This document shows positions 290 to 53,547 of a DNA stretch of 64,000 nt, piece after piece. Made by a program: the position numbers and the translations under genes. The notes beneath the pieces are model-generated. The model was given only the letters and a program-made list of their open reading frames with translations, ran no database searches and had not been told where the DNA came from. The first letter of the stretch is position 1, and the number at the start of each line of letters is the position of its first letter. Where the stretch lies: the IMG/VR virus record IMGVR_UViG_3300018080_008436, positions 248,001-312,000 of that record. One strand, given 5' to 3'.

Positions 290-299
290 TATTTATACC

Positions 300-13157: not shown

Positions 13158-13168
13158 GTTAATTCCTC

Positions 13169-13795: not shown

Positions 13796-13797
13796 CT

Positions 13798-15707: not shown

Positions 15708-16629
15708 ATTCCCTCCTTTCGAAATACAATGCGAACATAGCCTTAAAACCATAAATCGCCACATCCCAAGACCATCTACTAACTATTTCTGCCTGAAAAT
15801 TCTTCGCCTGTTCAATTCTAAACTCATCATCTTTCATTTTTTCTATTGCTTCACAAAGACTATCAACATTCCTATCAATTAGCAGTCCTTTTTCTCCATC
15901 TTTTATCATATCTGTAGCGGCCCCACTTCTTGTTGAAATAGGAGCCAAACCCATTGCTCCAGCTTCCATGAGGGGGTTATTCAAACCTTCAGTTTTGGAC
16001 ATACAGACATGGATATTGGCTTTTGAGTAGAAATATGGCATTTCTTCAAGTGTCAATTTTCTATTGTATTCAGCGGTTATGATTTCTGCATTAACCTTTT
16101 TACAAGCTTGTTTAACCAGATCAAAACCCTTGTTGGCAGATCCACGACCAGAAACACTTACCTTTATCGGACCTTCCAAAGGTTGGAATGCATTCTCATT
16201 CTTCTTTATGTCAAATACATCTAAATTCACTCCATGTCCAACATTCAAAAGTGGCTTGTCATCCACTATACCACTAAAAACGTCAAACATTCTTGAATTT
16301 ACTACATGGAATATAGAGCATTTATCTTTGATCGAAGCACATCTTCCTGGGAACCCATGTTCATACAATCCTTTGGGACCTTCTGGATGCTCTCTATGTA
16401 GAAATTCACATCTCAACCCCATTATCGTTTTCTCTTTGGGTGGATATCCACCCCTCAAAGGAATTGGATCAAGAACATACACTAAATCGTAGTCTTTAGA
16501 CATATTCTTGATACCCTGCTTTCTATAAGCGATATCTATATCATATTCTGTAATGCGTTTCTGGATCTCATGACAATGTCTGTCAAAAATCCACCCTTTC
16601 TGATCTGCGACTAATAAAATCTTCTTCAT
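15694..16629 (-). CDS. Glycosyltransferase family 4
   Basis: NKGFDL, SKTEGLNNPLMEAGAMG. Confidence 0.85.
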   Translation of the reverse strand: MKKILLVADQKGWIFDRHCHEIQKRITEYDIDIAYRKQGIKNMSKDYDLVYVLDPIPLRGGYPPKEKTIMGLRCEFLHREHPEGPKGLYEHGFPGRCASIKDKCSIFHVVNSRMFDVFSGIVDDKPLLNVGHGVNLDVFDIKKNENAFQPLEGPIKVSVSGRGSANKGFDLVKQACKKVNAEIITAEYNRKLTLEEMPYFYSKANIHVCMSKTEGLNNPLMEAGAMGLAPISTRSGAATDMIKDGEKGLLIDRNVDSLCEAIEKMKDDEFRIEQAKNFQAEIVSRWSWDVAIYGFKAMFALYFERREYVSE

Positions 16630-17441
16630 AAACTACTCCAGTATCTTTGCAGTGGAAGTGTTAGTATGTCAATTGTATTTCTCCCTGCCTTACATGAATT
16701 ACAATCGTAAAATTCGTTAAATCTCTGACTTTGGGGATGACCTCCATACCAATGCAGAGCATAAGATTCCTGAGTGATATGAATAACGTCCTCATATACC
16801 TTATTTATCAGGTAAGACTCAGGAATTGGATAGAAATAATTTGGAGGAGCATTAAAAAGAACATTCTCACTTTCCCACTCTTCTCGATGCTTAGAAAACA
16901 AATCCCGAAACATGAATGGCCCCAAACTATTGTAATCCTTAGGATCATAACAGTCCATCATCTCATTCATAATTTGTTTTACGACAGGACAATACTTCTT
17001 TGCCCCTATAACGCCAACAGGAGCATAAATACCACAAGATTGCGCCCTATATATGCTGTAGATAAAATCAACGTCAGGAAGGCTGTAAAATGGTCTTAGT
17101 ATTATCTGATCTGTATCAAGATAATACCCACCATTATTGTAAAGCCACCACCATCTAAAAAGATCGGATTGATAATTTGGGGCATAAGTGGGGAAAAGGT
17201 TTGATTCGACTACTTTTACACCGAGTTTAGACAAGGCTGGGATGTAGTCAGTAAACAAACGGCCCTCTCGCTGGAAATCCTGCTTCTCTACTCCCCATTT
17301 AATGTCTTTGGCAGACTGCTTGGAGAGATAGAGTTCGATCTCAGCGTCAGGATGGTGTTTCCTTAAAGAAACAAAAGTCAGGAACCGAAGATATGACAAC
17401 TCAGTTCCTGACCAAAAAAGTCCAAATTTTAACGGAATCAT
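16626..17441 (-). CDS. Glycosyltransferase GT32-like (DxD sugar-binding region)
   Basis: SDLFRWWWLYNNGGYYLDTD, LGP. Confidence 0.8.
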   Translation of the reverse strand: MIPLKFGLFWSGTELSYLRFLTFVSLRKHHPDAEIELYLSKQSAKDIKWGVEKQDFQREGRLFTDYIPALSKLGVKVVESNLFPTYAPNYQSDLFRWWWLYNNGGYYLDTDQIILRPFYSLPDVDFIYSIYRAQSCGIYAPVGVIGAKKYCPVVKQIMNEMMDCYDPKDYNSLGPFMFRDLFSKHREEWESENVLFNAPPNYFYPIPESYLINKVYEDVIHITQESYALHWYGGHPQSQRFNEFYDCNSCKAGRNTIDILTLPLQRYWSSL

Positions 17442-40371: not shown

Positions 40372-40713
40372 TTAGTCAGCCAAAACAACCAGCATGTGGT
40401 CATCATCAAAAATCTCAACATTATCTATGACAATATAGTGAGTATCTTGTTTGATAAACTCTTCTAATAATTGAGAAGCGATGTGATGTAGTCCATCGTC
40501 AGTAATGAAATAGGAAAATTCCTGTATTGATCTCACTACATCAATTTCATCTGAGAATTGGATGAGAATTTGGAATAATTTCGGGACATCTTCATGAGAG
40601 ATGTCGAATTCTTGAGTGAGATTTTTCGTTCTGACCCATTTTAGGAACTCAACTTTGAAATTTTCGTCCCTTTTGTGTTTAAGTATGGTGACATGAGGCA
40701 TTTTACCACTCAA
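40372..40713 (-). CDS. Hypothetical protein
   Basis: ORF track. Confidence 0.6.
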   Translation of the reverse strand: MSGKMPHVTILKHKRDENFKVEFLKWVRTKNLTQEFDISHEDVPKLFQILIQFSDEIDVVRSIQEFSYFITDDGLHHIASQLLEEFIKQDTHYIVIDNVEIFDDDHMLVVLAD

Positions 40714-41251
40714 TCGCTTTCGTAAACTTAACGTTGGTCTCTGATTTCAGTCTTTTCCGTAGTTTTGAAAAATCTTCTCTGCCAGTCCCAGGTCTTCTTT
40801 CATAATGATATTCCACAAACATCAAATCGACATAATGAATTGATCCTTCGTTTAGCATATGGTAGAGGATATCGTATTCAGCACCCTCTATATCCATTTT
40901 TACGACAATGTAGTCATCTGGAGAGAAATTATCTTTAATCCATTTGTCAAAATCGATACACTCAATAGTTCGTTTCTTCTCTCTTCTTGGTTTACTTGGG
41001 TTAGGAAAGACACTATTGGCCTGACCATATACCCTTCCGCTTGCATAAAAAGAAATTTCGCCATCAAAAGTCCATAGTGCTTTATTAAAGAAGGTAATAT
41101 TCTTCTTTTTCATCTCTTCATCGTGATTATCTGGCATTTTATTTGGGTCAAATGCAAAGAATTCAAAAGAGTCATCGTATTCTGGCCTTTTTTTAAAAAG
41201 CCTAATACCTTTACCTCTATAATATCCACAATCTATAAAAATTTTTCTCAT
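40703..41251 (-). CDS. FkbM-family methyltransferase
   Basis: FIDCG, VKMDIEGAEY, VEYH. Confidence 0.85.
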   Translation of the reverse strand: MRKIFIDCGYYRGKGIRLFKKRPEYDDSFEFFAFDPNKMPDNHDEEMKKKNITFFNKALWTFDGEISFYASGRVYGQANSVFPNPSKPRREKKRTIECIDFDKWIKDNFSPDDYIVVKMDIEGAEYDILYHMLNEGSIHYVDLMFVEYHYERRPGTGREDFSKLRKRLKSETNVKFTKAIEW

Positions 41252-42657
41252 TGTTTCACCTCTACCTCATTATACAAAAGGTCTTTATATGCCCTCAAAA
41301 GCTTCAGTTTATTTTCTTTGCCTATTGTCCAGTTTGCATGAAACGTTTTTATTGGGTAATCGGGCAAAGGTATTTTACCTCCATCATAATGAACTTCATT
41401 TGTGACTCTCCATACGGAAAAATACTCTTTGGGAAGCTGACAGATTTTAAATTTAGTCTTCATTTTTTTTCGAAAAGTTCTCAAAGCATTATCCATGTTA
41501 TCTTGGTCATCTCTACTGGAATCATAAACCTGTTCATAGTAATCAAAGAAACTCCGAACTCTATCGGTAACTCTTGCGGCGAACAAACCAGTACAATGTA
41601 TGTAGTTAGAATCCATTTGAAACACCATATCACTACCCGTTAAATGTTTTTCAATATCTTTGCGAATACTATTGAGAAATAGTACATCTACGTCTGAAAA
41701 CAATACATAATCATTTTTTGATGACCTGAACTCTTCTATTATTTTTGAAGCTTTTAGCCGAGTAACATCAAACCACCCAGATTTATAATAGTCACCACAT
41801 GAACCTTTTTGATCTATTTCAACAAATTTTAAGTCATATTCATTCGCCAGGAATTTATCGAACGATGGTTTGAAGAAATTTTTATAATAATCTAAATGTG
41901 ATTTTGATGCAACGGCGAATAATATAGGTTTTATTATCTCTCCATCTGAGGTCCTCCTAAAAACGATCCTATGACGGTCCAAGATGCCCTGAGTTCTATA
42001 CTTTTTGCCACAAATATCCTCTTTAATCAATGCCGCTGGCCCTTTATACGAATCGCTCAGCCCTCTATAGTTTCTTATATTGGAAGCATGATGGTGTATG
42101 GCTTTAATATGTGGGTAACCGTTTTTCATTTCTAAACCAGCGAACTGCGCCTCATATGCAAAGGAACTTTCGCAGTTTCCTTTACCAAGAAGAAAGTCAC
42201 AATCGAATTTTATCATGGGAGTCTTAAAAGCCCATGCGTCATGAGAATATCTAGGGTCAACTCGGAAAAGTGAACCTTCTGGAGTTCGATAGTTTTTGGG
42301 GCTGGAAATTTTACCGTTTTTTAACATGTCATGTCTAGTGATAACAACAATCAGATTATTCCAATCCATTTTTTCAAGAAAGTTTAGTGATTGATCAAAG
42401 AAGATGTCATTATTTGCTAACAGGAAGATGTCATTTGTACCCATTTCGTTAGCGAACTTGATAGCATCAGAATATTGCAACCTTTGGCCTATAATTATTT
42501 GACATATCTTGTCTGAGCTAAAGGAATATTTTGTTTCATTTAGCAAATATATCTTTGATATAAATGGATTATCAACATTTCGTTGCAATGTCTCGTCAAT
42601 TTCTTTTTGACGATCAGGATCTTTATCCACATAGTATTGGCAAATGAGATTAATCAT
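41248..42657 (-). CDS. Two-domain glycosyltransferase (C-terminal nucleotide-diphospho-sugar transferase)
   Basis: LANNDIFF; FSDVDV, CTGLF, DDQ, HANW..K. Confidence 0.75.
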   Translation of the reverse strand: MINLICQYYVDKDPDRQKEIDETLQRNVDNPFISKIYLLNETKYSFSSDKICQIIIGQRLQYSDAIKFANEMGTNDIFLLANNDIFFDQSLNFLEKMDWNNLIVVITRHDMLKNGKISSPKNYRTPEGSLFRVDPRYSHDAWAFKTPMIKFDCDFLLGKGNCESSFAYEAQFAGLEMKNGYPHIKAIHHHASNIRNYRGLSDSYKGPAALIKEDICGKKYRTQGILDRHRIVFRRTSDGEIIKPILFAVASKSHLDYYKNFFKPSFDKFLANEYDLKFVEIDQKGSCGDYYKSGWFDVTRLKASKIIEEFRSSKNDYVLFSDVDVLFLNSIRKDIEKHLTGSDMVFQMDSNYIHCTGLFAARVTDRVRSFFDYYEQVYDSSRDDQDNMDNALRTFRKKMKTKFKICQLPKEYFSVWRVTNEVHYDGGKIPLPDYPIKTFHANWTIGKENKLKLLRAYKDLLYNEVEVKQ

Positions 42658-42759: not shown

Positions 42760-43719
42760 ATGGCAGATAAAATATTTGATGATTATCATGGACCATCTAT
42801 TAAAATAAATGGAGTTTGCTATAAGTGGATAGGCGAAACAACTGCTTCAAAGAATGCAGAACCATCTGATATTGGTGGTTTTTATGATTCCTGTTTAGAA
42901 TGTAATTTAGAATCAAGTTCTTCAAGTTCTGAGGGTCCACCTGCGCAACGGTCAGTAAGGCTTGGACCGTCGCAAACTGGCTGGGGTGGTTATCTGGGAT
43001 ACTCAGGAGGGATTATTTCCCCATATGACGAGCCAGACGATTTGAGCGGCCAGCAGGTTGCATATTCTATTTGGCTTAAGGTTGATGGAGGGGTTGGGTA
43101 TGTAATGAGTGAGTTCGACAGTAGCTCTAATTTTGTCAATGGGATATACGGTGCTGGTAACGGTTGGGGGCCGAGATGGGCATGGCCAGGAAATCTTGAT
43201 AGCGGTATTGGCGGAATCGCTGATAATCTGCCAGGGAACTGGAAACACGTTTTCTGTGGGTTTTTGCCAGACCAACCCCCAGATGTAGACAACAACGCAC
43301 GAAAAGTCTATCTATGGGAAGATGGTGTCCGAAAAACCCGACCTGCACATCAGTATTTTGGGGATGACCAACCTGAAGCCGCCAACTCCTACTTGGGAAA
43401 TTGGGGAGGAAAAGTGATAGCGTGTTGTTTTGGTGTTTGGAAGTTCGCCACTCAATTGACACTGTCTGAGATGGATGACATGGCGAGTTATCTCCGAAAC
43501 AGTGGTGACGCTTTCTTATATGAGGACATGGTTTCAGATGGCGGTTCAGATTTACATCTAACTGATTTAGTCCACTTTTACAATCTGAATGAGTATAGTG
43601 ATGGAAGTACTGCGGTAACAAGAGAAGATAAGGTTGGAAACAAAGATTATATTGCATATGAGGGAGGTGGGTCTATAGAAGGCTATCCAGTATCTTCAAC
43701 CGACTTCCCATCATCTTAA
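42760..43719 (+). CDS. Family A modular protein (conserved N-cap, Ser linker, LamG/lectin-like C-domain)
   Basis: MADKIFDDYHGPSIKINGVCYK..CLEC-ESSSS. Confidence 0.7.
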   Translation: MADKIFDDYHGPSIKINGVCYKWIGETTASKNAEPSDIGGFYDSCLECNLESSSSSSEGPPAQRSVRLGPSQTGWGGYLGYSGGIISPYDEPDDLSGQQVAYSIWLKVDGGVGYVMSEFDSSSNFVNGIYGAGNGWGPRWAWPGNLDSGIGGIADNLPGNWKHVFCGFLPDQPPDVDNNARKVYLWEDGVRKTRPAHQYFGDDQPEAANSYLGNWGGKVIACCFGVWKFATQLTLSEMDDMASYLRNSGDAFLYEDMVSDGGSDLHLTDLVHFYNLNEYSDGSTAVTREDKVGNKDYIAYEGGGSIEGYPVSSTDFPSS

Positions 43720-43729
43720 GGAGTAAATC

Positions 43730-45043
43730 ATGGCAAACAGAATATTTGACGATTATCAGGGACCATCTGTAAAAGTAAATGGTGTCTGTTATAAATTTAT
43801 AGGAGAAACAACTTCTTCTGTAAATTCATACCCAACTCAAATCCAAGGAACTTTTGACTCTTGCCTAGAGTGTGCTTTAGAAAGTTCATCTTCTGAAAGT
43901 ACTGTATCTTCGTCTTCAGAATCATTTGATAATGTAAGTACATCTTCAGAATCAATCAACAATAATTCATCTTCAAGTTCATATATTTGTGAGAACGCAG
44001 AAGTTAATCAAGTTGTTCCAGCTTTTAATCAAATAACAATTACACCTCCAACTTTATGGAGTTCTCAGTTCCCAACAGGTAAAGTTTGTGTTGATGAAAC
44101 TCATGAAGGAAATTATGAAAACCATGGTGCAGTTGATTTAATCACTTTTGATAATGAGGGAGCGGCAAGTACTTTTTCTTCTGGACAATCCATTCAAGTG
44201 TGTGAGGGACCATGCCCTCCTGTTTCCAGTAGTTCAAGTTCTGAAGGATATTCTGAATCAAGTTCTTCAAGTTATGTTCCACCTGATTTAACAGGAAGGT
44301 CGATATATGTGGGCAACGGCAACTCTCTTACCCAATTAGATCCAGTTGTTGGAGATCTTTTGGAAGATCCAGCTACTCAAGGAAATCAAATCGTCTGGGG
44401 TGGATGGTTCCAAGGGTTACAGGGTTCAAGTGGAGCATATTGGTTTTGGATAGAGAATGAATGGAGATTAGGAAAAGATGTCGCTGGAAACTCTCAATCA
44501 TATGTTCGTTTAAATGGAGAGTGGCAATGGTCAAGACCTGCAAGTGGCCCCGCAAGAGGTGGTTGGCAACACTTAATGTGGTCATGGACCCCTTATTCCA
44601 ATGAAGATGGTGGAATAGCTCAATATGCTTCTTATTGGAATGGGCTTGCATGGACCCCATATAGAACTTTTAATGGAACTTTCTCATTCACGAATCCTGG
44701 TGGAGGAACAATATTCTATGATACAGAACCCAATTTTGGGATAAGGGCTACTGGTGTAGGAGTTTGGTCATTTCCTTATGAAAGTCAAATGACCAGAGCA
44801 CAGATAGCCTCTTGGTGTACTAGTATGAAAAACGATTATACAACTATAAATTACTATAATATGAATGAAGCAACTTACAAGAAAAGCAATATTATTCATT
44901 TTTGGAATTTTAACGAACCTAGTGATGGAAGTTCTCCAGTAACAAGATATGATGTTGTAGGAGAAAAACATTGGACAGATAATGACAATGGTAGTGGATA
45001 TGTAACTAGTGCTACAGTAATCCCAACAGAAGTTCCATCTTAA
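43730..45043 (+). CDS. Family A modular protein
   Basis: Same N-cap, Cys-bounded middle module, LamG-like tail. Confidence 0.7.
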   Translation: MANRIFDDYQGPSVKVNGVCYKFIGETTSSVNSYPTQIQGTFDSCLECALESSSSESTVSSSSESFDNVSTSSESINNNSSSSSYICENAEVNQVVPAFNQITITPPTLWSSQFPTGKVCVDETHEGNYENHGAVDLITFDNEGAASTFSSGQSIQVCEGPCPPVSSSSSSEGYSESSSSSYVPPDLTGRSIYVGNGNSLTQLDPVVGDLLEDPATQGNQIVWGGWFQGLQGSSGAYWFWIENEWRLGKDVAGNSQSYVRLNGEWQWSRPASGPARGGWQHLMWSWTPYSNEDGGIAQYASYWNGLAWTPYRTFNGTFSFTNPGGGTIFYDTEPNFGIRATGVGVWSFPYESQMTRAQIASWCTSMKNDYTTINYYNMNEATYKKSNIIHFWNFNEPSDGSSPVTRYDVVGEKHWTDNDNGSGYVTSATVIPTEVPS

Positions 45044-45053
45044 GGGGTAAATT

Positions 45054-46397
45054 ATGGCTAACAGAATATTTGATGACTATCAAGGAGCATCCGTTAAAAT
45101 AAACGGCATTTGCTACAAATTTATAGGGGAAACTACACGTTCTGTAAATTCTCAACCTCAAGAAATTGAAGAAACTTATGATAGTTGTTTAGCTTGTGCT
45201 ATTGAGTCAAGTTCATCAGAAAGTACTCAGTCTTCCAGTTCAGAATCAATTGGAAATACTAGTTCATCTTCTGAATCATTTGGTAATGAGTCATCTTCAA
45301 GCTCTCAACCATGTGTTGATTGCGAGATATCTATTATTTCAATTGCGGGGAATAAATTGTGGATTTCTCCTCCAACAATTTTTATCTCTGGAACGATCCC
45401 CTCACCTAGCCCAGTTTGTGTTGATGATATTTATGAAGCAAATTATAGAAACATGGGAAATGAAGATGAGATTGAATTTGTAGGTGCTGGAGTGGCGAGT
45501 AAATTTTCTGTTGGACAAATTATTGAAGTTTGCGAAGGTAATTGTGTTGGAACTAGTTCTTCAAGCTCTGAAGGATATTCTGAATCAAGTTCTTCAAGTT
45601 ATGAGCCACCTGCACAACGTAGCGTCAATGTTGTAAGAACGGATGGCTCTACAGTCAATCGTGGCAGGATTATATATGATGGTGGACCACTCGCATCACC
45701 GACAGAACATTGGACACAGCAAGGAACGCAGAAGATCTATTCAATATGGTCTCGCTGGACTTACGTATCCAATGTTTGGAACTACACAGAAAGCGGCTCA
45801 GCCCCTTTAGTCAATTTTGGGACTGGAAACTTCTCAGCCCGTCAGATGCGCGTTGGCTTAGCCAACCTTACGATGTATAACTCAGTAAGGATAAGTGGTG
45901 ATAATAGTTTCCAGTGGTATCATGCTCTTTATGCATGGACACCAATAGGCGTTTGGCATGATGACTACATGTTGGCCTACCGTGATGGCAATGTAGGCTT
46001 CAAGTTCCCAGACAGCAGAAATACAGAACTTACATCTCCTGCCGCTACTACGTGTATATTGGGGGCAGGAGGAGGACCTAGTCACTACTGTTGTATGGGC
46101 ATGTGGGACTTTCCATATGGTGATCACCTTTCTAAGGCAGAAGTTCAGGCTTTAGCTGTTTACCTTTATAATGGCGGCACTGCATTACAATATGAGAATC
46201 TGAGTGATGTTCCAGCGTATTTAGACAACATGACACATTTCTGGAATTTAAATGAGTATTCTGATGGCACATCGCCTGTGACTTACGAAGATAAAGTTGG
46301 AAATGCCGACTTCATAGGTGACCTATCGCCAGCATCCCCTGAGTATGGCCCCTTTAGCACCTACCCGATATCAACAACAGACTTCCCATCATCTTAA
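45054..46397 (+). CDS. Family A modular protein
   Basis: As above; ends YPISTTDFPSS like 42760. Confidence 0.7.
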   Translation: MANRIFDDYQGASVKINGICYKFIGETTRSVNSQPQEIEETYDSCLACAIESSSSESTQSSSSESIGNTSSSSESFGNESSSSSQPCVDCEISIISIAGNKLWISPPTIFISGTIPSPSPVCVDDIYEANYRNMGNEDEIEFVGAGVASKFSVGQIIEVCEGNCVGTSSSSSEGYSESSSSSYEPPAQRSVNVVRTDGSTVNRGRIIYDGGPLASPTEHWTQQGTQKIYSIWSRWTYVSNVWNYTESGSAPLVNFGTGNFSARQMRVGLANLTMYNSVRISGDNSFQWYHALYAWTPIGVWHDDYMLAYRDGNVGFKFPDSRNTELTSPAATTCILGAGGGPSHYCCMGMWDFPYGDHLSKAEVQALAVYLYNGGTALQYENLSDVPAYLDNMTHFWNLNEYSDGTSPVTYEDKVGNADFIGDLSPASPEYGPFSTYPISTTDFPSS

Positions 46398-46426
46398 GGA
46401 ATAAATTATGACAAAAGGAATAAATT

Positions 46427-47119
46427 ATGGCTAACAAAATATTTGATGATTACCAAGGGCCATCTATTAAAATAAATGGAGTGTGCTACAAGTTTATAGG
46501 TGAAACTACAGAACCCTTCGACTCTAACCCAAGTGAAATTGAAGGAGAATTTGACTCATGCCTTGCTTGTGCTTTAGAATCTAGTTCTTCAAATTCATCT
46601 GAAAGTATAGGTAACTTTTCAACATCAAGTTCAAGTAGCTCAAGCGAAGTGCCTGTTGTTCTTGGAAATGGAGAAACAGTAGATGTTGATGAAGTCCTTG
46701 GTGCAGGACATTATGGAAGGGTTCAAATCACTTATACTGGAGATCCTACTCCACCCAACGCCGCTGGTGTTGTGACAGTAAACAATGTCAGCTACAACAT
46801 AGCCAATGAAGATCCTGATTTTGCTTGGGATTACGACGATGCACAAAATGGTAGGCATGTGTTCACAGTTATTGGAGAGACTATCCACAGAACGGCTGAT
46901 GGTAAAGAGTTTTCGGTAACTTGGGATGGTACTGGTAGTATAATCTTTACGGTAGATGTTGAAGACATTAACAAGTCAAGCAGTAGCTCAAGTTCTTCAA
47001 GTTTTGATGATTTTAAAGCGTGGAATGATTTCGCTACTGATGGGCCAAAACCTAAGACTTGGGCAGACATGAGTAATAGTGGTGACTATCCAAGAACCTG
47101 GTCTGAACTACAAAGTTAA
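46427..47119 (+). CDS. Family A modular protein
   Basis: Same N-cap, unrelated C-domain. Confidence 0.7.
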   Translation: MANKIFDDYQGPSIKINGVCYKFIGETTEPFDSNPSEIEGEFDSCLACALESSSSNSSESIGNFSTSSSSSSSEVPVVLGNGETVDVDEVLGAGHYGRVQITYTGDPTPPNAAGVVTVNNVSYNIANEDPDFAWDYDDAQNGRHVFTVIGETIHRTADGKEFSVTWDGTGSIIFTVDVEDINKSSSSSSSSSFDDFKAWNDFATDGPKPKTWADMSNSGDYPRTWSELQS

Positions 47120-47128
47120 GGAGTAAAA

Positions 47129-47833
47129 ATGGCACAAATATTAGATACAGATTATGTTGGTGATAGTTTAGATAAACTATTATTGAATTCAAATACAACA
47201 GTAAATTTAACAAGTTCTCAAACTGCTACTCAAATACAAGCTGAGATTAATGCACAACCTAAGAATTTGAATGGTTACGACCTGACATTTCAGTTTGCAG
47301 ATGGGACTTATGCGCTGGATGCGGCATTGACGTTTAAGGGATTCCATGGTGGGACATTTAAAATATATGGTAATGCTTCTGATAATAGTCTATCAACTTC
47401 GAAATCGGTTGATTTAACTTTCAACAACAACACTAGCGGGATAATTGTGGACTCATGTTCGCGAGTAGAAATCTACTACTGTGATATCAGTCATAACACA
47501 GATGTTAATACAACATATGGTGTGCATGCTACAGATATCCCAGATATATATGTCAGGTATTGTTACATTCATGGGAACAGCAATGTTCGTGGCTCAAATG
47601 CTCAGTTTTTACGATCACTCGGCGTATTTCGTGATAACTATGTCAGCAACGTTCAGTATGCCTTATTTGTAGCAAATTCAGCAACAATATACTGTCAAAA
47701 TTGTGACGATACTGGAACTCAGCCTGCGTATGGTTTGTATTCAGTCGGAGCTTCAACAATTGGAAAAAACGGTACTCAACCATCTGGAAGCACCGCCAAT
47801 GAAAGTTCTGCATCTGGCGGCGTAATCCGATAA
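47129..47833 (+). CDS. Family B beta-helix-like protein
   Basis: DYVGDSLDKLLL..QPKNLNG..FADGTY..DDTGTQPAYGL..GGVIR. Confidence 0.7.
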   Translation: MAQILDTDYVGDSLDKLLLNSNTTVNLTSSQTATQIQAEINAQPKNLNGYDLTFQFADGTYALDAALTFKGFHGGTFKIYGNASDNSLSTSKSVDLTFNNNTSGIIVDSCSRVEIYYCDISHNTDVNTTYGVHATDIPDIYVRYCYIHGNSNVRGSNAQFLRSLGVFRDNYVSNVQYALFVANSATIYCQNCDDTGTQPAYGLYSVGASTIGKNGTQPSGSTANESSASGGVIR

Positions 47834-47851
47834 ATAAGGAGATTTTTTCAA

Positions 47852-48553
47852 ATGGCAGTTATACAAGATAGTGATTATGTTGGAGATTCATTGGGGAAGT
47901 TGTTGTTAAATGAGAATACTACAGTAAATCTCAATTCTTCAATGAGTGCTAGTGAAATTCAGGGGTTAATTGATGGTCAGCCTAAGAATTTGAATGGATT
48001 TAATTTAAATTTTCAATTTGGTGATGGAACATATACGTTGGATAGTCAGCTTTTATTTACTGGATTTTTTGGAGGAACTGTTCGTGCATATGGTAACTCA
48101 TCTGACAATTCTTTGAGTACCAGTAAGAATGTAGTGCTTAACTTCAACAGCAATTCAGAAGGTGTTATTGCAAGTAAATGTATGGATTTTGATGTTCGAT
48201 ATATGGAAATCTCAGTACAATCAAGTTCCAATTTTCGCAGATGCACTTATGGGATTGCTTGTCCTAGATTCAATGTTTTGTATTGTTATTTGCGAGGGAA
48301 TTCTACATCTTTAGGTGCCTCAATATATGTAAGTCATGGCACATCATATACTTCAGGCAACTATGTGTCGAATATCCAGAATGGTATTTATGCGGGTTGG
48401 TGTTCGAAAATTGGCAGTGATGGGAATGATGATACAGGTACTCAACCAGCATATGGGTTGTATGCTCTTGGTGGTGGTGTTATAGCAAAAAATGGGACAC
48501 AGCCTTCAGGTAGCACAAATGAAGGAACAGCAACTGGTGGGGAGATTCGATAA
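47852..48553 (+). CDS. Family B beta-helix-like protein
   Basis: Paralog. Confidence 0.7.
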   Translation: MAVIQDSDYVGDSLGKLLLNENTTVNLNSSMSASEIQGLIDGQPKNLNGFNLNFQFGDGTYTLDSQLLFTGFFGGTVRAYGNSSDNSLSTSKNVVLNFNSNSEGVIASKCMDFDVRYMEISVQSSSNFRRCTYGIACPRFNVLYCYLRGNSTSLGASIYVSHGTSYTSGNYVSNIQNGIYAGWCSKIGSDGNDDTGTQPAYGLYALGGGVIAKNGTQPSGSTNEGTATGGEIR

Positions 48554-49251
48554 TGGCTACAATTTCAGAAAGTGATTATGTAGGGGATTCGTTAAGTAAG
48601 TTGCTCTTAAATGAGAATACAACAGTAAATTTAAATAGTTCGATGAGTGCTACTCAAATACAAGCAGAGATAGATGCTCAACCTAAGAATTTGAATGGTT
48701 TTGATTTAACGTTCAAGTTTGCGGATGGTACATACACGCTGGCTTCTGGTTTGACTTTTAGCGGATTTCATGGGGGGCAAACACTCATCAACGGAAATGC
48801 TTCTGACAATACCCTGTCTACCACCAAATCTGTATTTTTGGATGCAGATGGTGCTACTGGGGAGAATGCTATTACAGTTGAAGAGTGTGACCTCGTTTAC
48901 ATCCAGTACTTAAAAATAGAATTTGATAGTGCTACTGGTAGGGGCGTTAGGCTAAGGTCTTCGAATTTCTATGTTGATGCGTGTTACATTTTAGGAGATA
49001 GCACATCAAATGGTGAATGCATACAGGCTGATTATGGCGCAGGAGCGGTAAGGCGTTGCTATTTAAGTAACGCGGAAAATGGAATCAGGGCAACTTATGG
49101 ATCTTGTGGATCAATTGACAACGATGATACAGGTACGGCTCCAGCATACGGTTTATATGCCTTGTATGGAGCAACGATTGGGAAAAGTGGTACGCAACCC
49201 TCTGGATCGACTGCAAACGAGCAAGCTTTCGGTGGCGGCGCAATCCGATAA
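48553..49251 (+). CDS. Family B beta-helix-like protein
   Basis: Paralog. Confidence 0.7.
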   Translation: MATISESDYVGDSLSKLLLNENTTVNLNSSMSATQIQAEIDAQPKNLNGFDLTFKFADGTYTLASGLTFSGFHGGQTLINGNASDNTLSTTKSVFLDADGATGENAITVEECDLVYIQYLKIEFDSATGRGVRLRSSNFYVDACYILGDSTSNGECIQADYGAGAVRRCYLSNAENGIRATYGSCGSIDNDDTGTAPAYGLYALYGATIGKSGTQPSGSTANEQAFGGGAIR

Positions 49252-49269
49252 ATTTAAGGAGATTTTCAA

Positions 49270-49377
49270 ATGGCACAAATATTAGATACAGATTATGTAG
49301 GTGATAGTTTAGACAAATTGTTATTGAATCCGAATACAACAGTAAAAGGAACAGCAACTGGAGGAGTAATAAGATAA
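49270..49377 (+). pseudogene. Family B gene collapsed by in-frame internal deletion (35 aa)
   Basis: MAQILDTDYVGDSLDKLLLNPNTTV fused to KGTATGGVIR*. Confidence 0.8.
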
Positions 49378-50099
49378 TGGGTGGACCAAATATTCAAACA
49401 AGCGATTATGTAGGTGATAGTCTTGATAAGTTGATCCTTTCAAATAACAAGACTGTCAATCTCGACAACTCAATGAGTACAAGTGAGATTCTGGCGTTAG
49501 TGAATGATCAACCTCGCAATCTTAATGGCTACACTCTGACGTTTCAGTTTGCAGATGGCACCTACAATTTGAGCAATACATTGGACTTCCGAGGGTTTCA
49601 TGGCGGAACTTTGTATATCCATGGGAATACAAGTGAAACTGATGCAACCGTTAAGCATACTACTCAGCAAGTCCATCTTAATGGCGCTTCAGTTGATGGG
49701 AATGTCATATTTGTATTTAGTTGTCAAAGTTACATCCAGATAAGGAATTTGAAGGTAACAGTTAAGGATTACAACAATGCAGGTGGGATCGTTGTACAAG
49801 GCTGTTGTCAAATTTTCATCCAATACAATTATGTTGTTGGTAGTGGGAAGTCAAATGCGAGGGCGGCAATTAGAGTTGATACATCGATTGGTGGAGTTTA
49901 TTCGAATTATGTGAGCAATATTCCTTATGGGATTGATTGTAATTTCGGAAAAATTTATTCTTATGACAATGATGACACTGGGACTCAACCTAACTATGGG
50001 CTGTTAGCTGGCTCTGGTGCAACAATTGGAAAAGGAAGTACTCAACCAACTGGTTCAATATCCAATGAAACAACAGGAAATGGAGCAGTGATAAGATAA
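49377..50099 (+). CDS. Family B beta-helix-like protein
   Basis: Paralog. Confidence 0.7.
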   Translation: MGGPNIQTSDYVGDSLDKLILSNNKTVNLDNSMSTSEILALVNDQPRNLNGYTLTFQFADGTYNLSNTLDFRGFHGGTLYIHGNTSETDATVKHTTQQVHLNGASVDGNVIFVFSCQSYIQIRNLKVTVKDYNNAGGIVVQGCCQIFIQYNYVVGSGKSNARAAIRVDTSIGGVYSNYVSNIPYGIDCNFGKIYSYDNDDTGTQPNYGLLAGSGATIGKGSTQPTGSISNETTGNGAVIR

Positions 50100-50209
50100 T
50101 GACACAGATATTAGATACAGATTACGTTGGTGATAGTTTAGATAAGTTGTTATTGAATTCAAATACAACAGTCAATTTAACATTAAAAGCAAAAAGGGAA
50201 AAGACATGA
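50099..50209 (+). pseudogene. Truncated family B 5' stub (36 aa)
   Basis: MTQILDTDYVGDSLDKLLLNSNTTVNLT then unrelated sequence. Confidence 0.75.
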
Positions 50210-50394
50210 ATACATTTATAGCACGAAAGGATAACGGTGATAAAATTTCCTTCTTAGAAGGAAATTTTAAACTTGGTGGATTAAATCCAGAATATGAAGC
50301 AAAGTATTGTGATTGTGATGAGAACACAACCAATACTTCGGAAATCGCAGATTGGGACACCGCTTTGGATGTGTCATATGTAATTGATGAATAA
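50206..50394 (+). CDS. Hypothetical protein
   Basis: ATGA-coupled to stub. Confidence 0.45.
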   Translation: MNTFIARKDNGDKISFLEGNFKLGGLNPEYEAKYCDCDENTTNTSEIADWDTALDVSYVIDE

Positions 50395-50586
50395 GAAGGA
50401 GAGACAATAAAATGGGCGCTTTTATTATTTGTTTATTGTTAATTGGTCTCCTAATACTAATTTGTAATTTATTAACACCAAAACTCATTGTTGTTACAAA
50501 AGCGGCAAAACTAGAAAGACGTTTTAATAATTATAGGCAAATTATTTTTCTTTTAGAGATAGAAGATAATTAATTAGGAATAAATT

Positions 50587-52059
50587 ATGGTAAACAGAAT
50601 ATTTGACGATTATCAAGGACCATCCATTAAAATAAATGGAGTCTGTTATAAATGGGCTGGGGAAACAACTGAACCCTTTAATTCTCACCCCAGTGAAATT
50701 GAAGGAACTTTTGATACTTGCTTGGAATGTGCAATAGAAAGTTCTTCAAGTTTGTCTTCTGAATCTGAGTCCTCTGAATCAATTAATAACTTTAGCTCTT
50801 CTTCTGAATCAATTGAAAATACTTCATCAAGTGAATCAATTGCATGTCAAGAAGGAGATATCCAATTTGTGCTAAGTCAAGCAAACGCATTACAATTCTC
50901 TCCCCCAGTATTTCAAGGAGCCATTGACGAAGGAATTGTTTGTATTGATGGAATTCGAGAGGGAACTTACACAAACTATGGGCAGGAAGATCTTATTGTT
51001 TTGAGTGACCCAGGAGCTTATGTGAATTATACTGCTGGACAAACTGTTGAAGTTTGTGAAGGGCAATGTCCTCAAGTTTCAAGTTCTTCAAGTTCTGAAG
51101 CATATAGTTCAGAGAGTTCAAGTAGTTCGTTCCCTGAAGGTATATTCTTAAAAATGGAATACGATGCAAGTACGAGTCTTACAACACAGCTTCGATTCGA
51201 TAATGTAATTGATTACGGAGATGCTATTATATATTGGGGAGATGGAGATACTACTGATATTAGTGGTACTGGGAACGGTACAGAAAACCATGTTTATGAT
51301 TCTAGTGGAACCTATGAGGTTAAAATAAGTGCTACTGGCAATTTTTGGTTAGGACAATCTACCACTACTTCATATCGAACAGGGTATAAAAAAATTACCC
51401 AATGGGGAGATGTAAAATGGTCCAGATGTGATTTCTCCTTTGCCAACCTTCCAGACCTAGAGGTGACAGCAACAGATTATCCTGATTTATCAAATGTAAC
51501 AGATGTTAGATATATGCTTGCTGGTTGTACGAATATGGTTGGAGACCAGCATGACTGGGCATGGGATATGACAGGAGTAACTGATTTAAGCCACATGTTT
51601 CAGAATTCTCTTGCTTTTAACGGCACTGTTCAAAACTTTAGCAACATGGGAGATGCAGAGAACCTGTCGTTCATGTTTGTGGGGAATGGCAGAAGTAATC
51701 CTGGTTCGTTCAATCAACCGATTGGAGTTTGGGATACATCTAGTGTAACAGATATAACTCAAATGTTACAATATCAGCCTGATTTTGATCAGGATTTATC
51801 AAACTGGGATGTTAGTAACGTGACAGATACTGCTCAATTTATGGAGAATTTTGGTGTTGAAGAGTTATCAAATGCAAACTATAACGCACTTCTGATTTCA
51901 TGGGGTGGACAATCATTAATCTCTCATGGCGATACTATTTCTTTTGGAAAAAGTAAGTATACAGATGACAGCGGAGATTGCCCAAGTTGTCCTATTACAA
52001 CAGGCAGAAGTGCTATAGCGGCGGCATGGGGTACATTACGAGATGGTGGGTCTGTTTAA
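50587..52059 (+). CDS. Family A modular protein with PKD-like and BspA/DUF285 repeats
   Basis: WGDG, FNQPIGVWDTSSVT, QDLSNWDVSNVT. Confidence 0.75.
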   Translation: MVNRIFDDYQGPSIKINGVCYKWAGETTEPFNSHPSEIEGTFDTCLECAIESSSSLSSESESSESINNFSSSSESIENTSSSESIACQEGDIQFVLSQANALQFSPPVFQGAIDEGIVCIDGIREGTYTNYGQEDLIVLSDPGAYVNYTAGQTVEVCEGQCPQVSSSSSSEAYSSESSSSSFPEGIFLKMEYDASTSLTTQLRFDNVIDYGDAIIYWGDGDTTDISGTGNGTENHVYDSSGTYEVKISATGNFWLGQSTTTSYRTGYKKITQWGDVKWSRCDFSFANLPDLEVTATDYPDLSNVTDVRYMLAGCTNMVGDQHDWAWDMTGVTDLSHMFQNSLAFNGTVQNFSNMGDAENLSFMFVGNGRSNPGSFNQPIGVWDTSSVTDITQMLQYQPDFDQDLSNWDVSNVTDTAQFMENFGVEELSNANYNALLISWGGQSLISHGDTISFGKSKYTDDSGDCPSCPITTGRSAIAAAWGTLRDGGSV

Positions 52060-52069
52060 GGAGTAAATT

Positions 52070-52660
52070 ATGGCTAACAGAATATTTGATGATTATCAAG
52101 GAGCATCCGTTAAAATAAACGGTATTTGCTATAAATTTATTGGAGAAACAACAAGACCATTTGATTCTCATCCAAGTGAAATTGAAGGAACTTTTGATAC
52201 TTGTTTGGCATGTGCTGTTGAAAGTTCATCTTCAGAAAGTACCCAGTCTTCCAGTTCTGAATCAATTAATAACTTTAGCTCTTCTTCTGAATCAATTGAA
52301 AATACTTCATCAAGTGAATCAATTGCATGTCAAGAAGGAGATATCCAATTTGTGCTAAGTCAAGCAAACGCTTTGCAATTTTCTCCCCCAGTATTTTTCG
52401 GAGTTATTCCAGAAGGAACCGTTTGTGTTGATGGGGTACATGAAGGAACTTATACAAATTATGGTGGAGAAGATTTAATTGTTTTTAGTGATTCAGGAGC
52501 TTATCAAAGCTATACTGATGGACAAACCATTGAAGTTTGTGAAGGGGTTTGTTTGCCACAAGCAGTTTATAAGTATAGCAATCTACAACTGAATGTATCA
52601 CCAAACACATATAGATATACTCCAGTTATAATTGAGTCAAGTTCATCAAGTTCAGGATAA
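52070..52660 (+). CDS. Family A modular protein (short, mosaic)
   Basis: 5' end like 45054, middle like 50587. Confidence 0.7.
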   Translation: MANRIFDDYQGASVKINGICYKFIGETTRPFDSHPSEIEGTFDTCLACAVESSSSESTQSSSSESINNFSSSSESIENTSSSESIACQEGDIQFVLSQANALQFSPPVFFGVIPEGTVCVDGVHEGTYTNYGGEDLIVFSDSGAYQSYTDGQTIEVCEGVCLPQAVYKYSNLQLNVSPNTYRYTPVIIESSSSSSG

Positions 52661-52675: not shown

Positions 52676-53158
52676 ATGGATTTATATTTTTTACAAGACC
52701 AAGGAGACGCTTTGGTTTATAATGACGGAATTGCATATGAGTTTGTTGAGCAAACAGTTCAAGTCCCAAATGCAAGTGGAGCGCAAGTTATTGAAGGAAA
52801 CATCTCTTCATTTAATTTCAGCATTGCTGACGCACAATTAAAAACAGCTTACACTGCTGGTGAACATGCTTTGGCTTTTTATGTTGATGAAAATAAAATT
52901 GAAGTTGACATGCCCCTTGCCAACACTTGGTATACTTTCCCCGATGTTCCAGTTGCAGGAGTTATTCGGGTTTGGCAAACGGGAGCATTTTACCCAAACA
53001 TAAAAATTAATGGTATTGATCAGGCCGTTAACGCAGGAACAAGCAAAGCTAGTGCAATGCCATACAATGTTGCTGTTGGAGATGTAATCGAAATACGAGA
53101 ACCAACTACTAGTGGAAACACTGGGTACGGATATATATTGCCATTTGTTTATCCATAA
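52676..53158 (+). CDS. Hypothetical beta-rich protein
   Basis: AGGAGG RBS. Confidence 0.65.
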   Translation: MDLYFLQDQGDALVYNDGIAYEFVEQTVQVPNASGAQVIEGNISSFNFSIADAQLKTAYTAGEHALAFYVDENKIEVDMPLANTWYTFPDVPVAGVIRVWQTGAFYPNIKINGIDQAVNAGTSKASAMPYNVAVGDVIEIREPTTSGNTGYGYILPFVYP

Positions 53159-53179: not shown

Positions 53180-53217
53180 AAAAAAGGGTGGACTAAGTCC
53201 ACCCTTTAACATTTACT

Positions 53218-53547
53218 TCATTCAGTTAGTACAGGGATCTTCTTCGGTTTGCCCCTACTAGACTTCGGCAAACTAATTTTAAGAACTCCATTGTCTAAAG
53301 CACTTTTTATCTTACTTACCGCAACATCATTTGGAAGTCTGAAGGATAAATCTTTTTTGCCATAAGCTCTCTTCCTATATCCACCTTCTTTATCTCGTTC
53401 CCAAGAAATGTCCAAATAATTGTCCTTTGCATAAACCTCTACTTTGTCCTTCTCGACACCTGGCATATCAACTCTTACTTCATAGCTTTCATCATTTGTC
53501 CAAGTGTCATACTCAACGTCTCTGTTAAAAAAGAAATCAGAATACAT
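53218..53547 (-). CDS. Small heat-shock protein (Hsp20/alpha-crystallin)
   Basis: VDMPGVEKDKV..FRLP..LDNGVLKISLPK. Confidence 0.9.
   Translation of the reverse strand: MYSDFFFNRDVEYDTWTNDESYEVRVDMPGVEKDKVEVYAKDNYLDISWERDKEGGYRKRAYGKKDLSFRLPNDVAVSKIKSALDNGVLKISLPKSSRGKPKKIPVLTE

What the first reader, a model, noticed from the sequence alone, without database searches (positions are those of the whole stretch)
42760..52660. Family A: six proteins with a common N-terminal cap, poly-Ser linkers and swappable tips
Seen: a ~50-aa cap (IFDDYxGxSxKxNGxCYK..CLxC) followed by Ser/Glu tracts, an optional Cys-bounded module and different C-domains (LamG-like x3, PKD+DUF285, others). About 115 bp are identical between ~50773 and ~52256, while the 5' end of 52070 resembles 45054, showing recent shuffling. 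Inference: interchangeable fibre/adhesin subunits docking through the cap. The Ser tracts are plausible O-glycosylation targets for the GT cluster.
Basis: partly seen in the sequence, partly recalled or inferred. Interest (0 to 1): 0.6.

Follow-up and report, generated by a model that had tools for sequence, protein, structure and literature searches.

The report
Plug-in adhesin family of a giant phage
A half-megabase bacteriophage carries about twenty genes that join one small, previously undescribed cysteine-containing head domain, through serine-rich flexible linkers, to many different sugar-binding or adhesion tips, most likely interchangeable virion surface fibres, possibly sugar-coated by the phage's own large glycosylation gene cluster.

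Summary
Six + strand genes (42760-52660) share a 51-aa N-terminal domain with invariant Cys20/Cys45/Cys48, then Ser/Glu linkers. Four add a four-Cys beta-barrel module, and the C-domains differ. The 116-nt exact repeat (50773-50888 = 52256-52371) and the 45054-like 5' end of 52070 are confirmed.

The family is larger than reported: 17 N-terminal caps in the 296-kb record and 19 in a 476-kb record of the same phage. The phage is tailed (portal, TerL), with a genome of about 524 kb.

A profile search of 1.84 billion proteins found 90 relatives, all unnamed metagenomic proteins. Most have the cap at the N-terminus, followed by Ser tracts. Some carry it internally, up to seven in tandem.

With 63 sequences the cap folds confidently (pLDDT 90) and has no PDB match.

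In one lineage of small siphophages, cap proteins sit 4-5 genes after the tape measure, the receptor-binding position.

Best reading: exchangeable virion adhesins anchored by the cap. Docking and oligomerisation are untested.

Glycosylation is circumstantial. The two cap clusters flank about 50 kb rich in glycosyltransferase, methyltransferase, sulfotransferase and PseI/PseF-like genes. Poly-Ser tracts occur in about 40 of 277 proteins.

Verdict: new variant of a known kind; interest 0.62.

The parts
42760..43719 (+). Cap protein, 319 aa: cap (residues 1-51), short Ser tract, orphan C-domain paralogous to those of 43730 and 45054
   Evidence: the only sequence relative of the 45054 C-domain
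43730..45043 (+). Cap protein, 437 aa: cap, linker with two ES[IF]xNx[ST] motifs, four-Cys barrel module (87-162), second Ser linker, LamG-like-type C-domain
45054..46397 (+). Cap protein, 447 aa: cap, linker, four-Cys module (87-164; AF2 pLDDT ~95), linker, ConA/LamG-like jelly-roll C-domain (186-447)
46427..47119 (+). Cap protein, 230 aa: cap, Ser linker, ~110-aa beta-rich domain of unknown family, poly-Ser(9), short W-rich tail
47129..50099 (+). Four 'family B' paralogues (234, 233, 232 and 240 aa): short right-handed beta-helix proteins embedded in the cluster; no cap
   Evidence: Beta_helix E 2.4e-6; TM 0.78-0.83 to DUF1565 and Prophage_tail clusters
49269..49353 (+). Stub copy of the family B 5' end (89% identical to 47128-47212); 35-aa ORF
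50098..50182 (+). Second stub copy of the family B 5' end (92% identical); 36-aa ORF
50587..52059 (+). Cap protein, 490 aa: cap, linker, four-Cys module, linker, PKD-like motif plus DUF285 (BspA-type) repeats
52070..52660 (+). Cap protein, 196 aa: cap, linker, four-Cys module, short tail. Mosaic: the 5' end is like 45054, the linker and module like 50587
50773..50888 (+). 116-nt exact repeat, copy 1 (encodes the linker and the start of the module)
   Evidence: double-depth 116-nt unitig
52256..52371 (+). 116-nt exact repeat, copy 2
52676..53158 (+). 160-aa protein: possible Cys-less, degenerate cap-plus-module paralogue. A 160-aa gene sits in the same position after the short cap protein of the other cluster; its homology to this one was not tested
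   Evidence: cap HMM E 0.005; pairwise E 0.03; weak
53183..53207 (.). Perfect 11-bp-stem hairpin with T/A runs on both sides, between the convergent genes; closes the + strand block
40703..42657 (-). Divergently transcribed neighbours: FkbM-family methyltransferase (182 aa) and nucleotide-diphospho-sugar transferase (469 aa)
4024..17441 (-). Core of the glycan-synthesis block: sulfotransferase, NeuB/PseI-like synthase, PseF-like cytidylyltransferase, two GT2, three GT1/GT4-type, one GT32-type and several SAM methyltransferases

Best explanation
The six genes belong to a family of about 20 paralogues in a ~524-kb tailed phage. I read them as modular virion-surface adhesins (receptor-binding or host-glycan-binding fibrils).

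Each protein has four parts:
(1) A 51-aa N-terminal domain: beta-hairpin, strand, then a helix that starts with CxxC. Three Cys are invariant. It is probably stabilised by metal or disulfide.
(2) An extended Ser/Glu linker that usually carries an ES[IF]xNx[ST] motif.
(3) Optionally, a small four-Cys beta-barrel spacer and a second linker.
(4) A variable tip: ConA/LamG-like, DUF285/BspA-like, beta-helix, FG-GAP propeller, arabinofuranosidase-B-like, or a W-rich C-terminal domain.

Inferred mechanism. The common N-terminal domain fixes every paralogue to the same kind of site on the particle. Synteny in small relatives suggests the tail tip or baseplate region. The flexible linkers project the different tips, so the virion displays a mixed set of binding specificities. 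New combinations arise by recombination within the conserved cap-, linker- and module-coding DNA.

Second, less certain inference. The Ser tracts are O-glycosylated in the cytoplasm by the phage's own glycan cluster, giving stiff, protease-resistant stalks.

Shown: the architecture, the family size, purifying selection on the cap, mosaicism, the tip domain types, and the tail-module position in one siphophage lineage.
Inferred: virion location in this phage, docking by the cap, and glycosylation.
For: Architecture and family size.

Phage identity: portal (phrog_16240, E 1.6e-47) and TerL (phrog_2, E 5e-28). The gene order on a 523,871-bp contig is a circular permutation of the record.

The cap is an autonomous, selected domain. 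AF2 gives pLDDT 89.8 with 63 sequences. Median pS is 0.66 against pN 0.23 among 15 paralogous caps. The three Cys are invariant in 63 sequences.

The architecture is conserved outside this phage: 90 hits, 45 of them at E < 1e-10, mostly an N-terminal cap followed by Ser runs.

Tips are of adhesin or glycan-binding type: DUF285; Laminin_G_3, DUF285 and FG-GAP_2; LamG, matrixin, ArabFuran-catal and HpiC1-like among relatives; ConA/LamG fold for 45054. The co-located family B proteins are beta-helices resembling Prophage_tail C-domains.

Tail context. In L039 the gene order is HK97 capsid - connector - tail terminator - tail_T - tape measure - 3 genes - two cap proteins. L037 has the same layout, with the tape measure at E 7e-38 and a 'virion structural protein' next to the caps.

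In this phage, one member (712 aa, FG-GAP) lies inside a block of giant Ser-tract genes at G000 127-181 kb.

Shuffling.

Glycan link.
- The two cap clusters flank a region with about 9 glycosyltransferase-like genes, about 6 methyltransferases, a sulfotransferase, and PseI-like (E 2e-30) and PseF-like (E 1e-25) genes.
- Distant cap proteins also sit beside sulfotransferase/GT8/methyltransferase genes, an SASA-family gene, or a sub-threshold MptE/Maf-like gene.
Against: - No virion proteomics and no RNA run.
- No docking partner was found. The post-tape-measure proteins of the small siphophages have no homologue in this phage.
- The trimer or oligomer test could not be run.
- The cap also occurs internally (G000 3810-7037, residues 737-781) and in tandem arrays of 2-7 copies in other proteins. 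That fits a general structural or binding repeat as well as an anchor.
- In this phage the two main clusters lie among glycan, translation-factor and nucleotide-metabolism genes, not recognised morphogenesis genes.
- None of ten large proteins tested in the 122-175 kb giant-gene block hit a PHROG with an assigned function; one hit phrog_7816, of unknown function.
- L037 and L039 are related to each other, so the synteny argument rests on one lineage.
- Glycosylation evidence is adjacency only. The PseI/PseF-like and MptE-like matches are all below the curated cut-offs.
Confidence: 0.55

Rival explanations
1. Decoration rather than tail fibre. The cap binds a highly repeated lattice site on the capsid or tail sheath. 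The roughly 20 paralogues compete for it and form a mixed, Hoc-like or fibril-like coat on the whole particle.
For: About 20 paralogues with one identical-type anchor need many equivalent sites. The proteins are short (188-712 aa), have flexible low-complexity linkers, and show no shaft repeats or recognisable trimerisation motifs. Many other large Ser-tract proteins exist in the phage, including ORFs that are 50-52% Ser.
Against: In the small siphophage lineage the cap genes sit in the post-tape-measure (tail-tip) region, not beside the capsid gene. No lattice partner was identified.
Confidence: 0.2
2. The 'cap' is not an anchor but a small Cys-stabilised binding or structural repeat, for example metal-binding or glycan-binding. 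It can be used singly at the N-terminus or in arrays. Attachment to the virion, if any, is through another part.
For: There are internal and tandem copies: P0023 and P0047 x5-6, P0088 x7, G000 3810-7037 x1. Internal copies have a fourth Cys about 20 residues upstream, giving a Cys4 set typical of a self-contained Zn or disulfide unit. The fold is novel, so function cannot be transferred from a known structure.
Against: In about 70 of 90 relatives, and in all 19 copies with a full-length cap in this phage, the domain starts at residue 1-5. That strong positional bias is expected for an assembly end. The tips are already binding domains.
Confidence: 0.13
3. Non-virion proteins: soluble lectins or enzymes released at lysis, or acting inside or on the infected cell. 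The cap would be a recognition tag for the phage's modification enzymes.
For: The clusters lie next to modification genes rather than morphogenesis genes. Some relatives carry enzyme domains such as matrixin and arabinofuranosidase-B-like.
Against: There is no signal peptide or hydrophobic N-terminus (read directly from the sequences). Relatives sit in a tail module. Large paralogous arrays with swapped binding tips are typical of receptor-binding proteins.
Confidence: 0.08
4. The cap is a capsid-targeting propeptide, and the S-x-E-rich linker is cut by the prohead protease, as for internal head proteins of T4 and phiKZ-like phages.
For: There is a conserved N-terminal tag followed by Ser/Glu-rich sequence containing many S-x-E triplets. 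The cleavage-motif analogy comes from my own knowledge and was not tested.
Against: The tips are extracellular-type binding domains, and the module and cap contain conserved Cys. The cap is a folded 51-aa domain under purifying selection rather than a short signal. Relatives are in tail modules.
Confidence: 0.04

Closest known systems
Multi-RBP phages with a conserved N-terminal anchor and exchangeable C-terminal receptor-binding domains (T7 gp17-type fibres; branched tailspike sets of CBA120, G7C, Klebsiella jumbo phages PhiK64-1/RaK2). Comparison from my own knowledge.
   Same: Many paralogues share a conserved N-terminus and carry swapped binding or depolymerase-type tips, with recombination at the domain junctions. 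In related siphophages the genes lie after the tape measure.
   Different: The anchor here is only 51 aa, Cys-containing and of unmatched predicted fold. There is no PHROG or Pfam membership. Flexible poly-Ser linkers replace trimeric shafts. About 20 copies. The domain also occurs in internal tandem arrays.
Cellulosome dockerin-cohesin plug-in system (own knowledge)
   Same: One small docking-size module is joined by Ser-rich, often glycosylated, linkers to many different catalytic or binding modules. This is the closest analogy for how the family may work.
   Different: The cap has no duplicated Ca-binding F-hand motif and no Dockerin Pfam match. No scaffoldin- or cohesin-like partner was found. 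The docking itself is unproven.
Serine-rich repeat glycoproteins (Fap1, GspB, SRRPs) and Sdr proteins of Gram-positive bacteria (PMC6973325, PMC7661464, PMC3794999)
   Same: Ser-rich stalks project a binding region. In SRRPs the stalks are O-glycosylated in the cytoplasm by GT4-type enzymes encoded nearby. This phage has three Glycos_transf_1-type genes in the flanking cluster.
   Different: No signal peptide, no aSec system and no LPXTG anchor. The tracts in this family are short (20-35 aa). The setting is a virus. Modification is not demonstrated.
Virus-encoded virion glycosylation: mycobacteriophage capsid and tail-tube glycans (Freeman et al. 2023, PMC10527164, as cited in PMC12619734); Mimivirus fibrils and chlorovirus capsids (own knowledge)
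   Same: The virus carries its own glycosyltransferase cluster, presumed to modify surface structural proteins.
   Different: The cluster here is far larger and includes nonulosonic-acid-type, sulfo- and methyl-transferase genes. The proposed acceptors are poly-Ser linkers in about 40 proteins. Nothing has been tested experimentally.

Membership tests
Phage receptor-binding proteins with an N-terminal anchor and exchangeable tip | Paralogues share the N-terminus and differ in the C-terminal binding domain | tested here: met
Phage receptor-binding proteins with an N-terminal anchor and exchangeable tip | Encoded in the tail or baseplate module | tested here: inconclusive
   Met in the related siphophage contigs L037 and L039, which are one lineage. 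In this phage the clusters lie among glycan and translation genes; only the 712-aa member is in a giant-gene block of unknown function.
Phage receptor-binding proteins with an N-terminal anchor and exchangeable tip | Homo-oligomeric (usually trimeric) assembly and binding of the anchor to a virion hub | not testable with these tools
No partner candidate was found.
Phage receptor-binding proteins with an N-terminal anchor and exchangeable tip | Sequence membership in a described anchor or tail-fibre family | tested here: not met
   No Pfam or PHROG family covers the cap. No PDB relative by sequence or by fold.
Laminin_G_3 / ConA-like lectin fold (C-domains of 42760, 43730, 45054) | Profile match to PF13385 or a related family | tested here: not met
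   No Pfam hit at E <= 0.1. hhalign against the phage's own LamG_3 paralogues gives probability 0.6%.
Laminin_G_3 / ConA-like lectin fold (C-domains of 42760, 43730, 45054) | Jelly-roll fold similarity | tested here: met
   For 45054 only. ESM Atlas feature score 0.97, with all named clusters among the listed best hits carrying Laminin_G_3. TM 0.63-0.69 over 199-224 residues, based on the Atlas's low-confidence model. My own AF2 model of this part was poor.
DUF285 (PF03382, BspA-type repeats) | Score above the Pfam gathering threshold | tested here: met
   50587: 75.1 bits against 25. Paralogue G000 24098-25516: 87.7 bits.
Serine-rich repeat glycoproteins (SRRP) | Signal peptide/aSec export and LPXTG wall anchor | tested here: not met
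   The N-termini are polar (MANRIFDDYQG...) and there is no C-terminal LPXTG; read directly from the sequences.
Serine-rich repeat glycoproteins (SRRP) | Ser-rich tracts with dedicated cytoplasmic glycosyltransferases encoded nearby | tested here: inconclusive
   Ser tracts are present and GT1/GT4-type genes are in the flanking cluster. No GtfA/GtfB orthology was tested and there are no modification data.
Dockerin (cellulosome) | Duplicated Ca-binding F-hand motif / PF00404 match | tested here: not met
   No Pfam hit. The cap is a hairpin-strand-helix Cys3 domain.
Flagellin-type nonulosonic-acid O-glycosylation (PseI/PseF/Maf) | PseI, PseF and Maf orthologues scoring above curated cut-offs | tested here: inconclusive
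   PseI-like 106 bits against 340; PseF-like 90 bits against 206. MptE-like 25.5 bits against 34.6. Other Pse or Leg pathway genes were not searched for.
Zinc-ribbon / treble-clef-like metal-binding domain | Four ligands brought together by a knuckle and a helix N-terminus; fold match | tested here: inconclusive
   Three Cys are invariant, and a fourth is present in internal copies. The CxxC sits at the start of the predicted helix. There is no structural match, and model coordinates could not be inspected.

The most novel reading that the evidence does not exclude
A ~524-kb phage builds its own glycocalyx. About 40 proteins with poly-Ser tracts, including ORFs that are 50-52% Ser and up to 4,276 aa, would be O-glycosylated by a phage-encoded pathway of about 50 kb, possibly with nonulosonic-acid, methylated or sulfated sugars. 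The cap family would then be a cellulosome-like plug-in system: a new metal- or disulfide-stabilised 51-aa docking fold that mounts about 20 interchangeable lectin or adhesin tips on that coat. Small siphophages in the same sediments would share the same parts.
Probability: 0.2. Interest if true: 0.85.

Novelty: new variant of a known kind. Interest (0 to 1): 0.62.

Why it matters
If correct, this is an undescribed way for phages to organise host recognition. A tiny common anchor domain and flexible, probably glycosylated, poly-Ser stalks would carry about twenty exchangeable binding tips on one particle.

It would define a new protein domain family: no Pfam, PHROG or PDB relative, and 90 metagenomic members.

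It would also give a concrete substrate hypothesis for the large glycosylation clusters seen in huge phages, whose targets are mostly unknown.

The family is shared between a half-megabase phage and 25-35-kb siphophage contigs, one of them from a sample that also holds the huge phage. That makes it a tractable marker for exchange of receptor-binding modules across very different phages.

Tried and rejected
- Megablast of the 10-kb region against 50,697 phage records: no match.
- Pfam and PHROGs on the six proteins: only DUF285, plus PHROG families without an assigned function matching the DUF285 part of 50587 and a weak one (E 0.0012) in the linker-module part of 52070; nothing for the cap.
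- Terminase_6N, NCLDV capsid and gp23 family searches of the record: none. Portal and TerL were then found by PHROGs.
- PHROGs on ten giant proteins around the 712-aa member: essentially nothing.
- hhalign of the three window C-domains against the LamG_3 paralogues: negative.
- Word search for relatives of the 45054 C-domain: only its own paralogue.
- First AF2 run of full-length 45054 with 16 sequences: only the Cys module was confident. A BFVD search with that model gave meaningless rows.
- Module fold search: best Z 8.2, within the stated noise range. Matches were to Sen1/SETX and riboflavin-synthase/LumP-type barrels and to ~270-aa baseplate chains of siphophages JBD30, Chi and R4C. Taken as 'small six-stranded barrel' only.
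- Cap fold: no match in PDB (VIA-wide best Z 2.4; Foldseek none) or BFVD. The Atlas structure library was not available.
- Scan of 185,579 prokaryote genomes with cap patterns: no relative. The wider alignment was too diverse to give patterns.
- Reads: only Logan contigs were available. They break at the repeats and show cross-mapping paralogues, not population-level recombinants. No RNA run.
- The NCBIfam search gave no support for the Maf-like gene.
- Relation of the 160-aa protein at 52676 to the family is weak.

Full report
**1. What is there**

The window is G000:C1:35648-99647 of a 296,327-bp IMG/VR record. Between 42760 and 53158 there is an island of + strand genes in an otherwise - strand region, and GC skew flips sign there.

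Six ORFs begin with the same 51 residues: 42760-43719, 43730-45043, 45054-46397, 46427-47119, 50587-52059 and 52070-52660. The consensus starts MAnKIFDDYQGxSIKINGvCYKFIGETT and ends DSCLECALE. Y9, G11, C20, Y21, T27, P35, C45, L46 and C48 are invariant.

Every cap is followed by a Ser/Glu tract. Four proteins then have a module bounded by four Cys (residues ~87-163) and a second Ser tract. The C-terminal parts differ.

At DNA level the 5' ends are a six-copy repeat family. Most of the genes are preceded by an AAGGAG/GGAG-type ribosome-binding site. The block ends at a perfect hairpin at 53183-53207.

**2.

- The exact repeat is 116 nt, 50773-50888 = 52256-52371. In Logan's assembly graph it is a separate 116-nt unitig at twice the depth of its neighbours.
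- The first 60 nt of 52070 match 45054 at 58/60 and 50587 at 50/60.
Its module is 80% identical to that of 50587 but only 44% to that of 45054.
- 50587 and its DUF285 paralogue in the other cluster share 73% in the cap but 32% in the module.
- Against this mosaic background the caps are old. Median synonymous difference among 15 paralogous caps is 0.66, against 0.23 non-synonymous. The cap is therefore kept by purifying selection, not by recent copying. The 116-nt tract is a recent conversion event.

**3. The family is much larger**

- A cap HMM finds 17 N-terminal caps in the record. Ten lie on the - strand at G000 11.8-25.5 kb, six in the window, and one is a 712-aa protein at 158.5-160.6 kb.
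- There is also one internal copy, in the 1,075-aa Ser-rich protein at G000 3810-7037.
- A 476-kb IMG/VR record of the same phage has 19 N-terminal copies.
- The tips include Laminin_G_3, DUF285 and FG-GAP_2, an arabinofuranosidase-B-like domain in P0002, a beta-helix-like protein, and a W-rich C-terminal domain. That last domain is shared with non-cap neighbours.
- Both clusters contain the same trio: a DUF285 protein, a short cap-plus-module protein, and a 160-aa protein.
- The C-domain of 45054 has no sequence relatives beyond its paralogue and no profile match to LamG. The ESM Atlas nevertheless places it in the ConA/LamG fold.

**4. What the genome is**

- A portal (E 1.6e-47) and a large terminase (E 5e-28) identify a tailed phage.
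- The same genes lie on an ENA contig of 523,871 bp. Its gene order is a circular permutation of the record. The genome is therefore about 524 kb, and the 'provirus' record is a piece of it.
- It encodes IF3, RF-1 fragments, HSP20, ribonucleotide reductase and a tRNA nucleotidyltransferase.
- Near-identical sequence is present in sediment and seawater metagenomes from three studies. No RNA run holds it.

**5. Relatives elsewhere**

- Word search found only the phage's own proteins.
- A profile search of 1.84 billion representatives found 90 proteins, 45 of them at E < 1e-10.
- All are metagenomic, and those checked are unnamed singletons.
- Most have the cap at residue 1-5 followed by Ser runs, or in some cases Pro/Thr-rich runs, and then varied domains.
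- A minority carry the domain internally or in tandem. P0023 and P0047 have 5-6 copies and P0088 has seven. These internal copies have a fourth Cys about 20 residues upstream.
- No relative was found in 185,579 prokaryote genomes or in INPHARED phages.

**6. Structure**

With 63 sequences the cap is predicted at pLDDT 89.8. It has a hairpin (13-22, containing C20), a strand (38-42) and a helix (45-54) that begins with C45-x-x-C48. It has no match in the PDB (best Z 2.4; Foldseek none) or in BFVD, and no PDB sequence relative.

The Cys pattern suggests a metal site or disulfides. This is an inference; I could not inspect the coordinates.

The four-Cys module is predicted at pLDDT ~95 as a small beta-barrel. 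Its best structural matches (Z 7-8) are within the noise range stated by the tool.

**7. Context that bears on function**

Two small siphophage-type contigs carry cap proteins in the classical receptor-binding position.
- L039 (25 kb) runs capsid - connector - terminator - tail_T - tape measure - 315 aa - 353 aa - 349 aa (Ser-rich) - cap protein - cap protein.
- L037 (35 kb) has the same layout. Its tape measure scores E 7e-38, and a 'virion structural protein' sits next to two cap proteins.
- The two contigs are related to each other, so this counts as one lineage. Their post-tape-measure proteins have no homologue in the huge phage.

Inside the window cluster sit four short beta-helix proteins (family B) whose predicted fold resembles Prophage_tail C-domains.

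**8. Serine tracts and the glycan cluster**

- The region between the two cap clusters (G000 ~26-78 kb) holds about nine glycosyltransferase-like genes: GT1/GT4 x3, GT2 x3, one GT32-type, Nucleotid_trans, and a sub-threshold MptE/Maf-like gene.
- It also holds about six methyltransferases, a sulfotransferase, a BNR sialidase-like gene, and NeuB/PseI-like and PseF-like genes, both below the equivalog cut-offs.
- Distant cap proteins are also next to sulfotransferase/GT8/methyltransferase genes, an SASA-family gene, or an MptE-like gene that aligns with the one in this phage (E 3e-6).
- Poly-Ser is not special to this family. Forty of 277 ORFs in the record have S4+ runs. These include a 4,276-aa ORF that is 52% Ser and a 1,266-aa ORF that is 50% Ser. 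The proteome as a whole is 11.5% Ser.
- Ser codons are mixed (TCT, TCA, AGT), so the tracts are not simple slippage products.
- The first linker usually contains a conserved ES[IF]xNx[ST] motif: 13 of 17 members, four other Ser-rich proteins of the phage, and eight external relatives.
- All of this makes glycosylation plausible, but it is adjacency and analogy only.

**9. Interpretation**

I read the family as exchangeable virion-surface adhesins or receptor-binding fibrils, with the N-terminal domain as the common attachment end (confidence 0.55). The Ser linkers may be glycosylated; I put that part at about 0.35-0.4.

The main caveats are these:
- There is no virion or expression evidence.
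- No partner has been identified.
- The oligomer test could not be run.
- The domain also occurs in internal arrays, which fits a general Cys-stabilised repeat equally well.

The rivals are a capsid or sheath decoration coat, a cap that is itself a binding repeat, non-virion proteins, and a capsid-targeting propeptide.

**10. Comparison and novelty**

The family works like the multi-RBP sets of other phages and, by architecture, like dockerin-tagged cellulosome components or SRRP adhesins. It fails the membership tests for all of them:
- no known anchor family;
- no dockerin motif;
- no signal peptide, aSec system or LPXTG.

It is best filed as a new variant of a known kind, built on an undescribed domain.

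Noticed in passing
G000:C1:261791-274621 (L033) and G000:C1:1-3798 (L009): ORFs of 4,276 aa (52% Ser, 329 runs of S4+) and at least 1,266 aa (50% Ser). Forty of 277 ORFs have poly-Ser runs, and the proteome is 11.5% Ser. This is a mucin-like protein set in a phage.
   Followed up: partly
window 47129-50182: Four paralogous ~235-aa right-handed beta-helix proteins (family B), plus two 85-nt stubs of their 5' end (49269-49353 and 50098-50182; 89-92% identical to 47128-47212). The stubs give 35-36-aa ORFs, which look like relics of recombination.
   Followed up: partly
window cap proteins, residues ~59-80 (e.g. 45054 residues 64-80): A conserved linker motif, ES[IF]xNx[ST], containing an N-x-S/T sequon. 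It occurs in 13 of 17 cap proteins, four other Ser-rich proteins and eight external relatives. A second periodic motif, SE[GA]YSE, occurs in the second linkers.
   Followed up: partly
whole record; ENA contig k141_941235 (L012, L021, L022, L035, L036): The IMG/VR 'provirus' record (296 kb) is part of a genome of about 524 kb. Gene positions on the 523,871-bp contig are a circular permutation of the record.
   Followed up: yes
L010:8940-10247 (-) and L037:3-1283 (+): Sub-threshold MptE/Maf-like domains (25.5 and 30.7 bits against a cut-off of 34.6) in two unrelated phages that both carry cap-plus-poly-Ser proteins. The two proteins align with each other (E 3e-6).
   Followed up: partly
G000:C1:3810-7037 and 1-3798 (L009): Two giant Ser-rich proteins start with a duplicated ~60-aa unit containing D-x-D-x-N-x-D-like motifs, reminiscent of EF-hand or dockerin loops. 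Pfam does not confirm this. The first protein also has an internal cap domain at residues 737-781.
   Followed up: partly
G000 11787-12995, 158494-160632, 160646-163003; L039:8952-11840: A W-rich C-terminal domain (Cys-bounded start, ending ...W.RG..W) is shared by proteins with and without caps, and by 13 of the 90 cap relatives. No Pfam family covers it.
   Followed up: partly
L036:11630-12347 (G000 ~20.1-20.9 kb): The release-factor gene appears split into a 43-aa PCRF piece and a 133-aa RF-1 piece beside cap cluster 1. A relative (L023) has an intact 204-aa PCRF+RF-1 gene and a cREC_REC gene in similar synteny.
   Followed up: no
window 20223-21056: Coordinates of the window and of the ENA contig differ by 24 nt across this gene (268-aa product in the contig). 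This is an in-frame length variant between assemblies.
   Followed up: no
P0023 and P0047 (external relatives): Long proteins with tandem cap domains also contain a GDPH motif, known from autoproteolytic VWD/RGM-type domains (own knowledge).
   Followed up: no
window 53183-53207: A perfect 11-bp-stem hairpin flanked by A and T runs, between the convergent genes 52676-53158 (+) and 53218-53547 (-, HSP20). It is probably a bidirectional terminator.
   Followed up: partly
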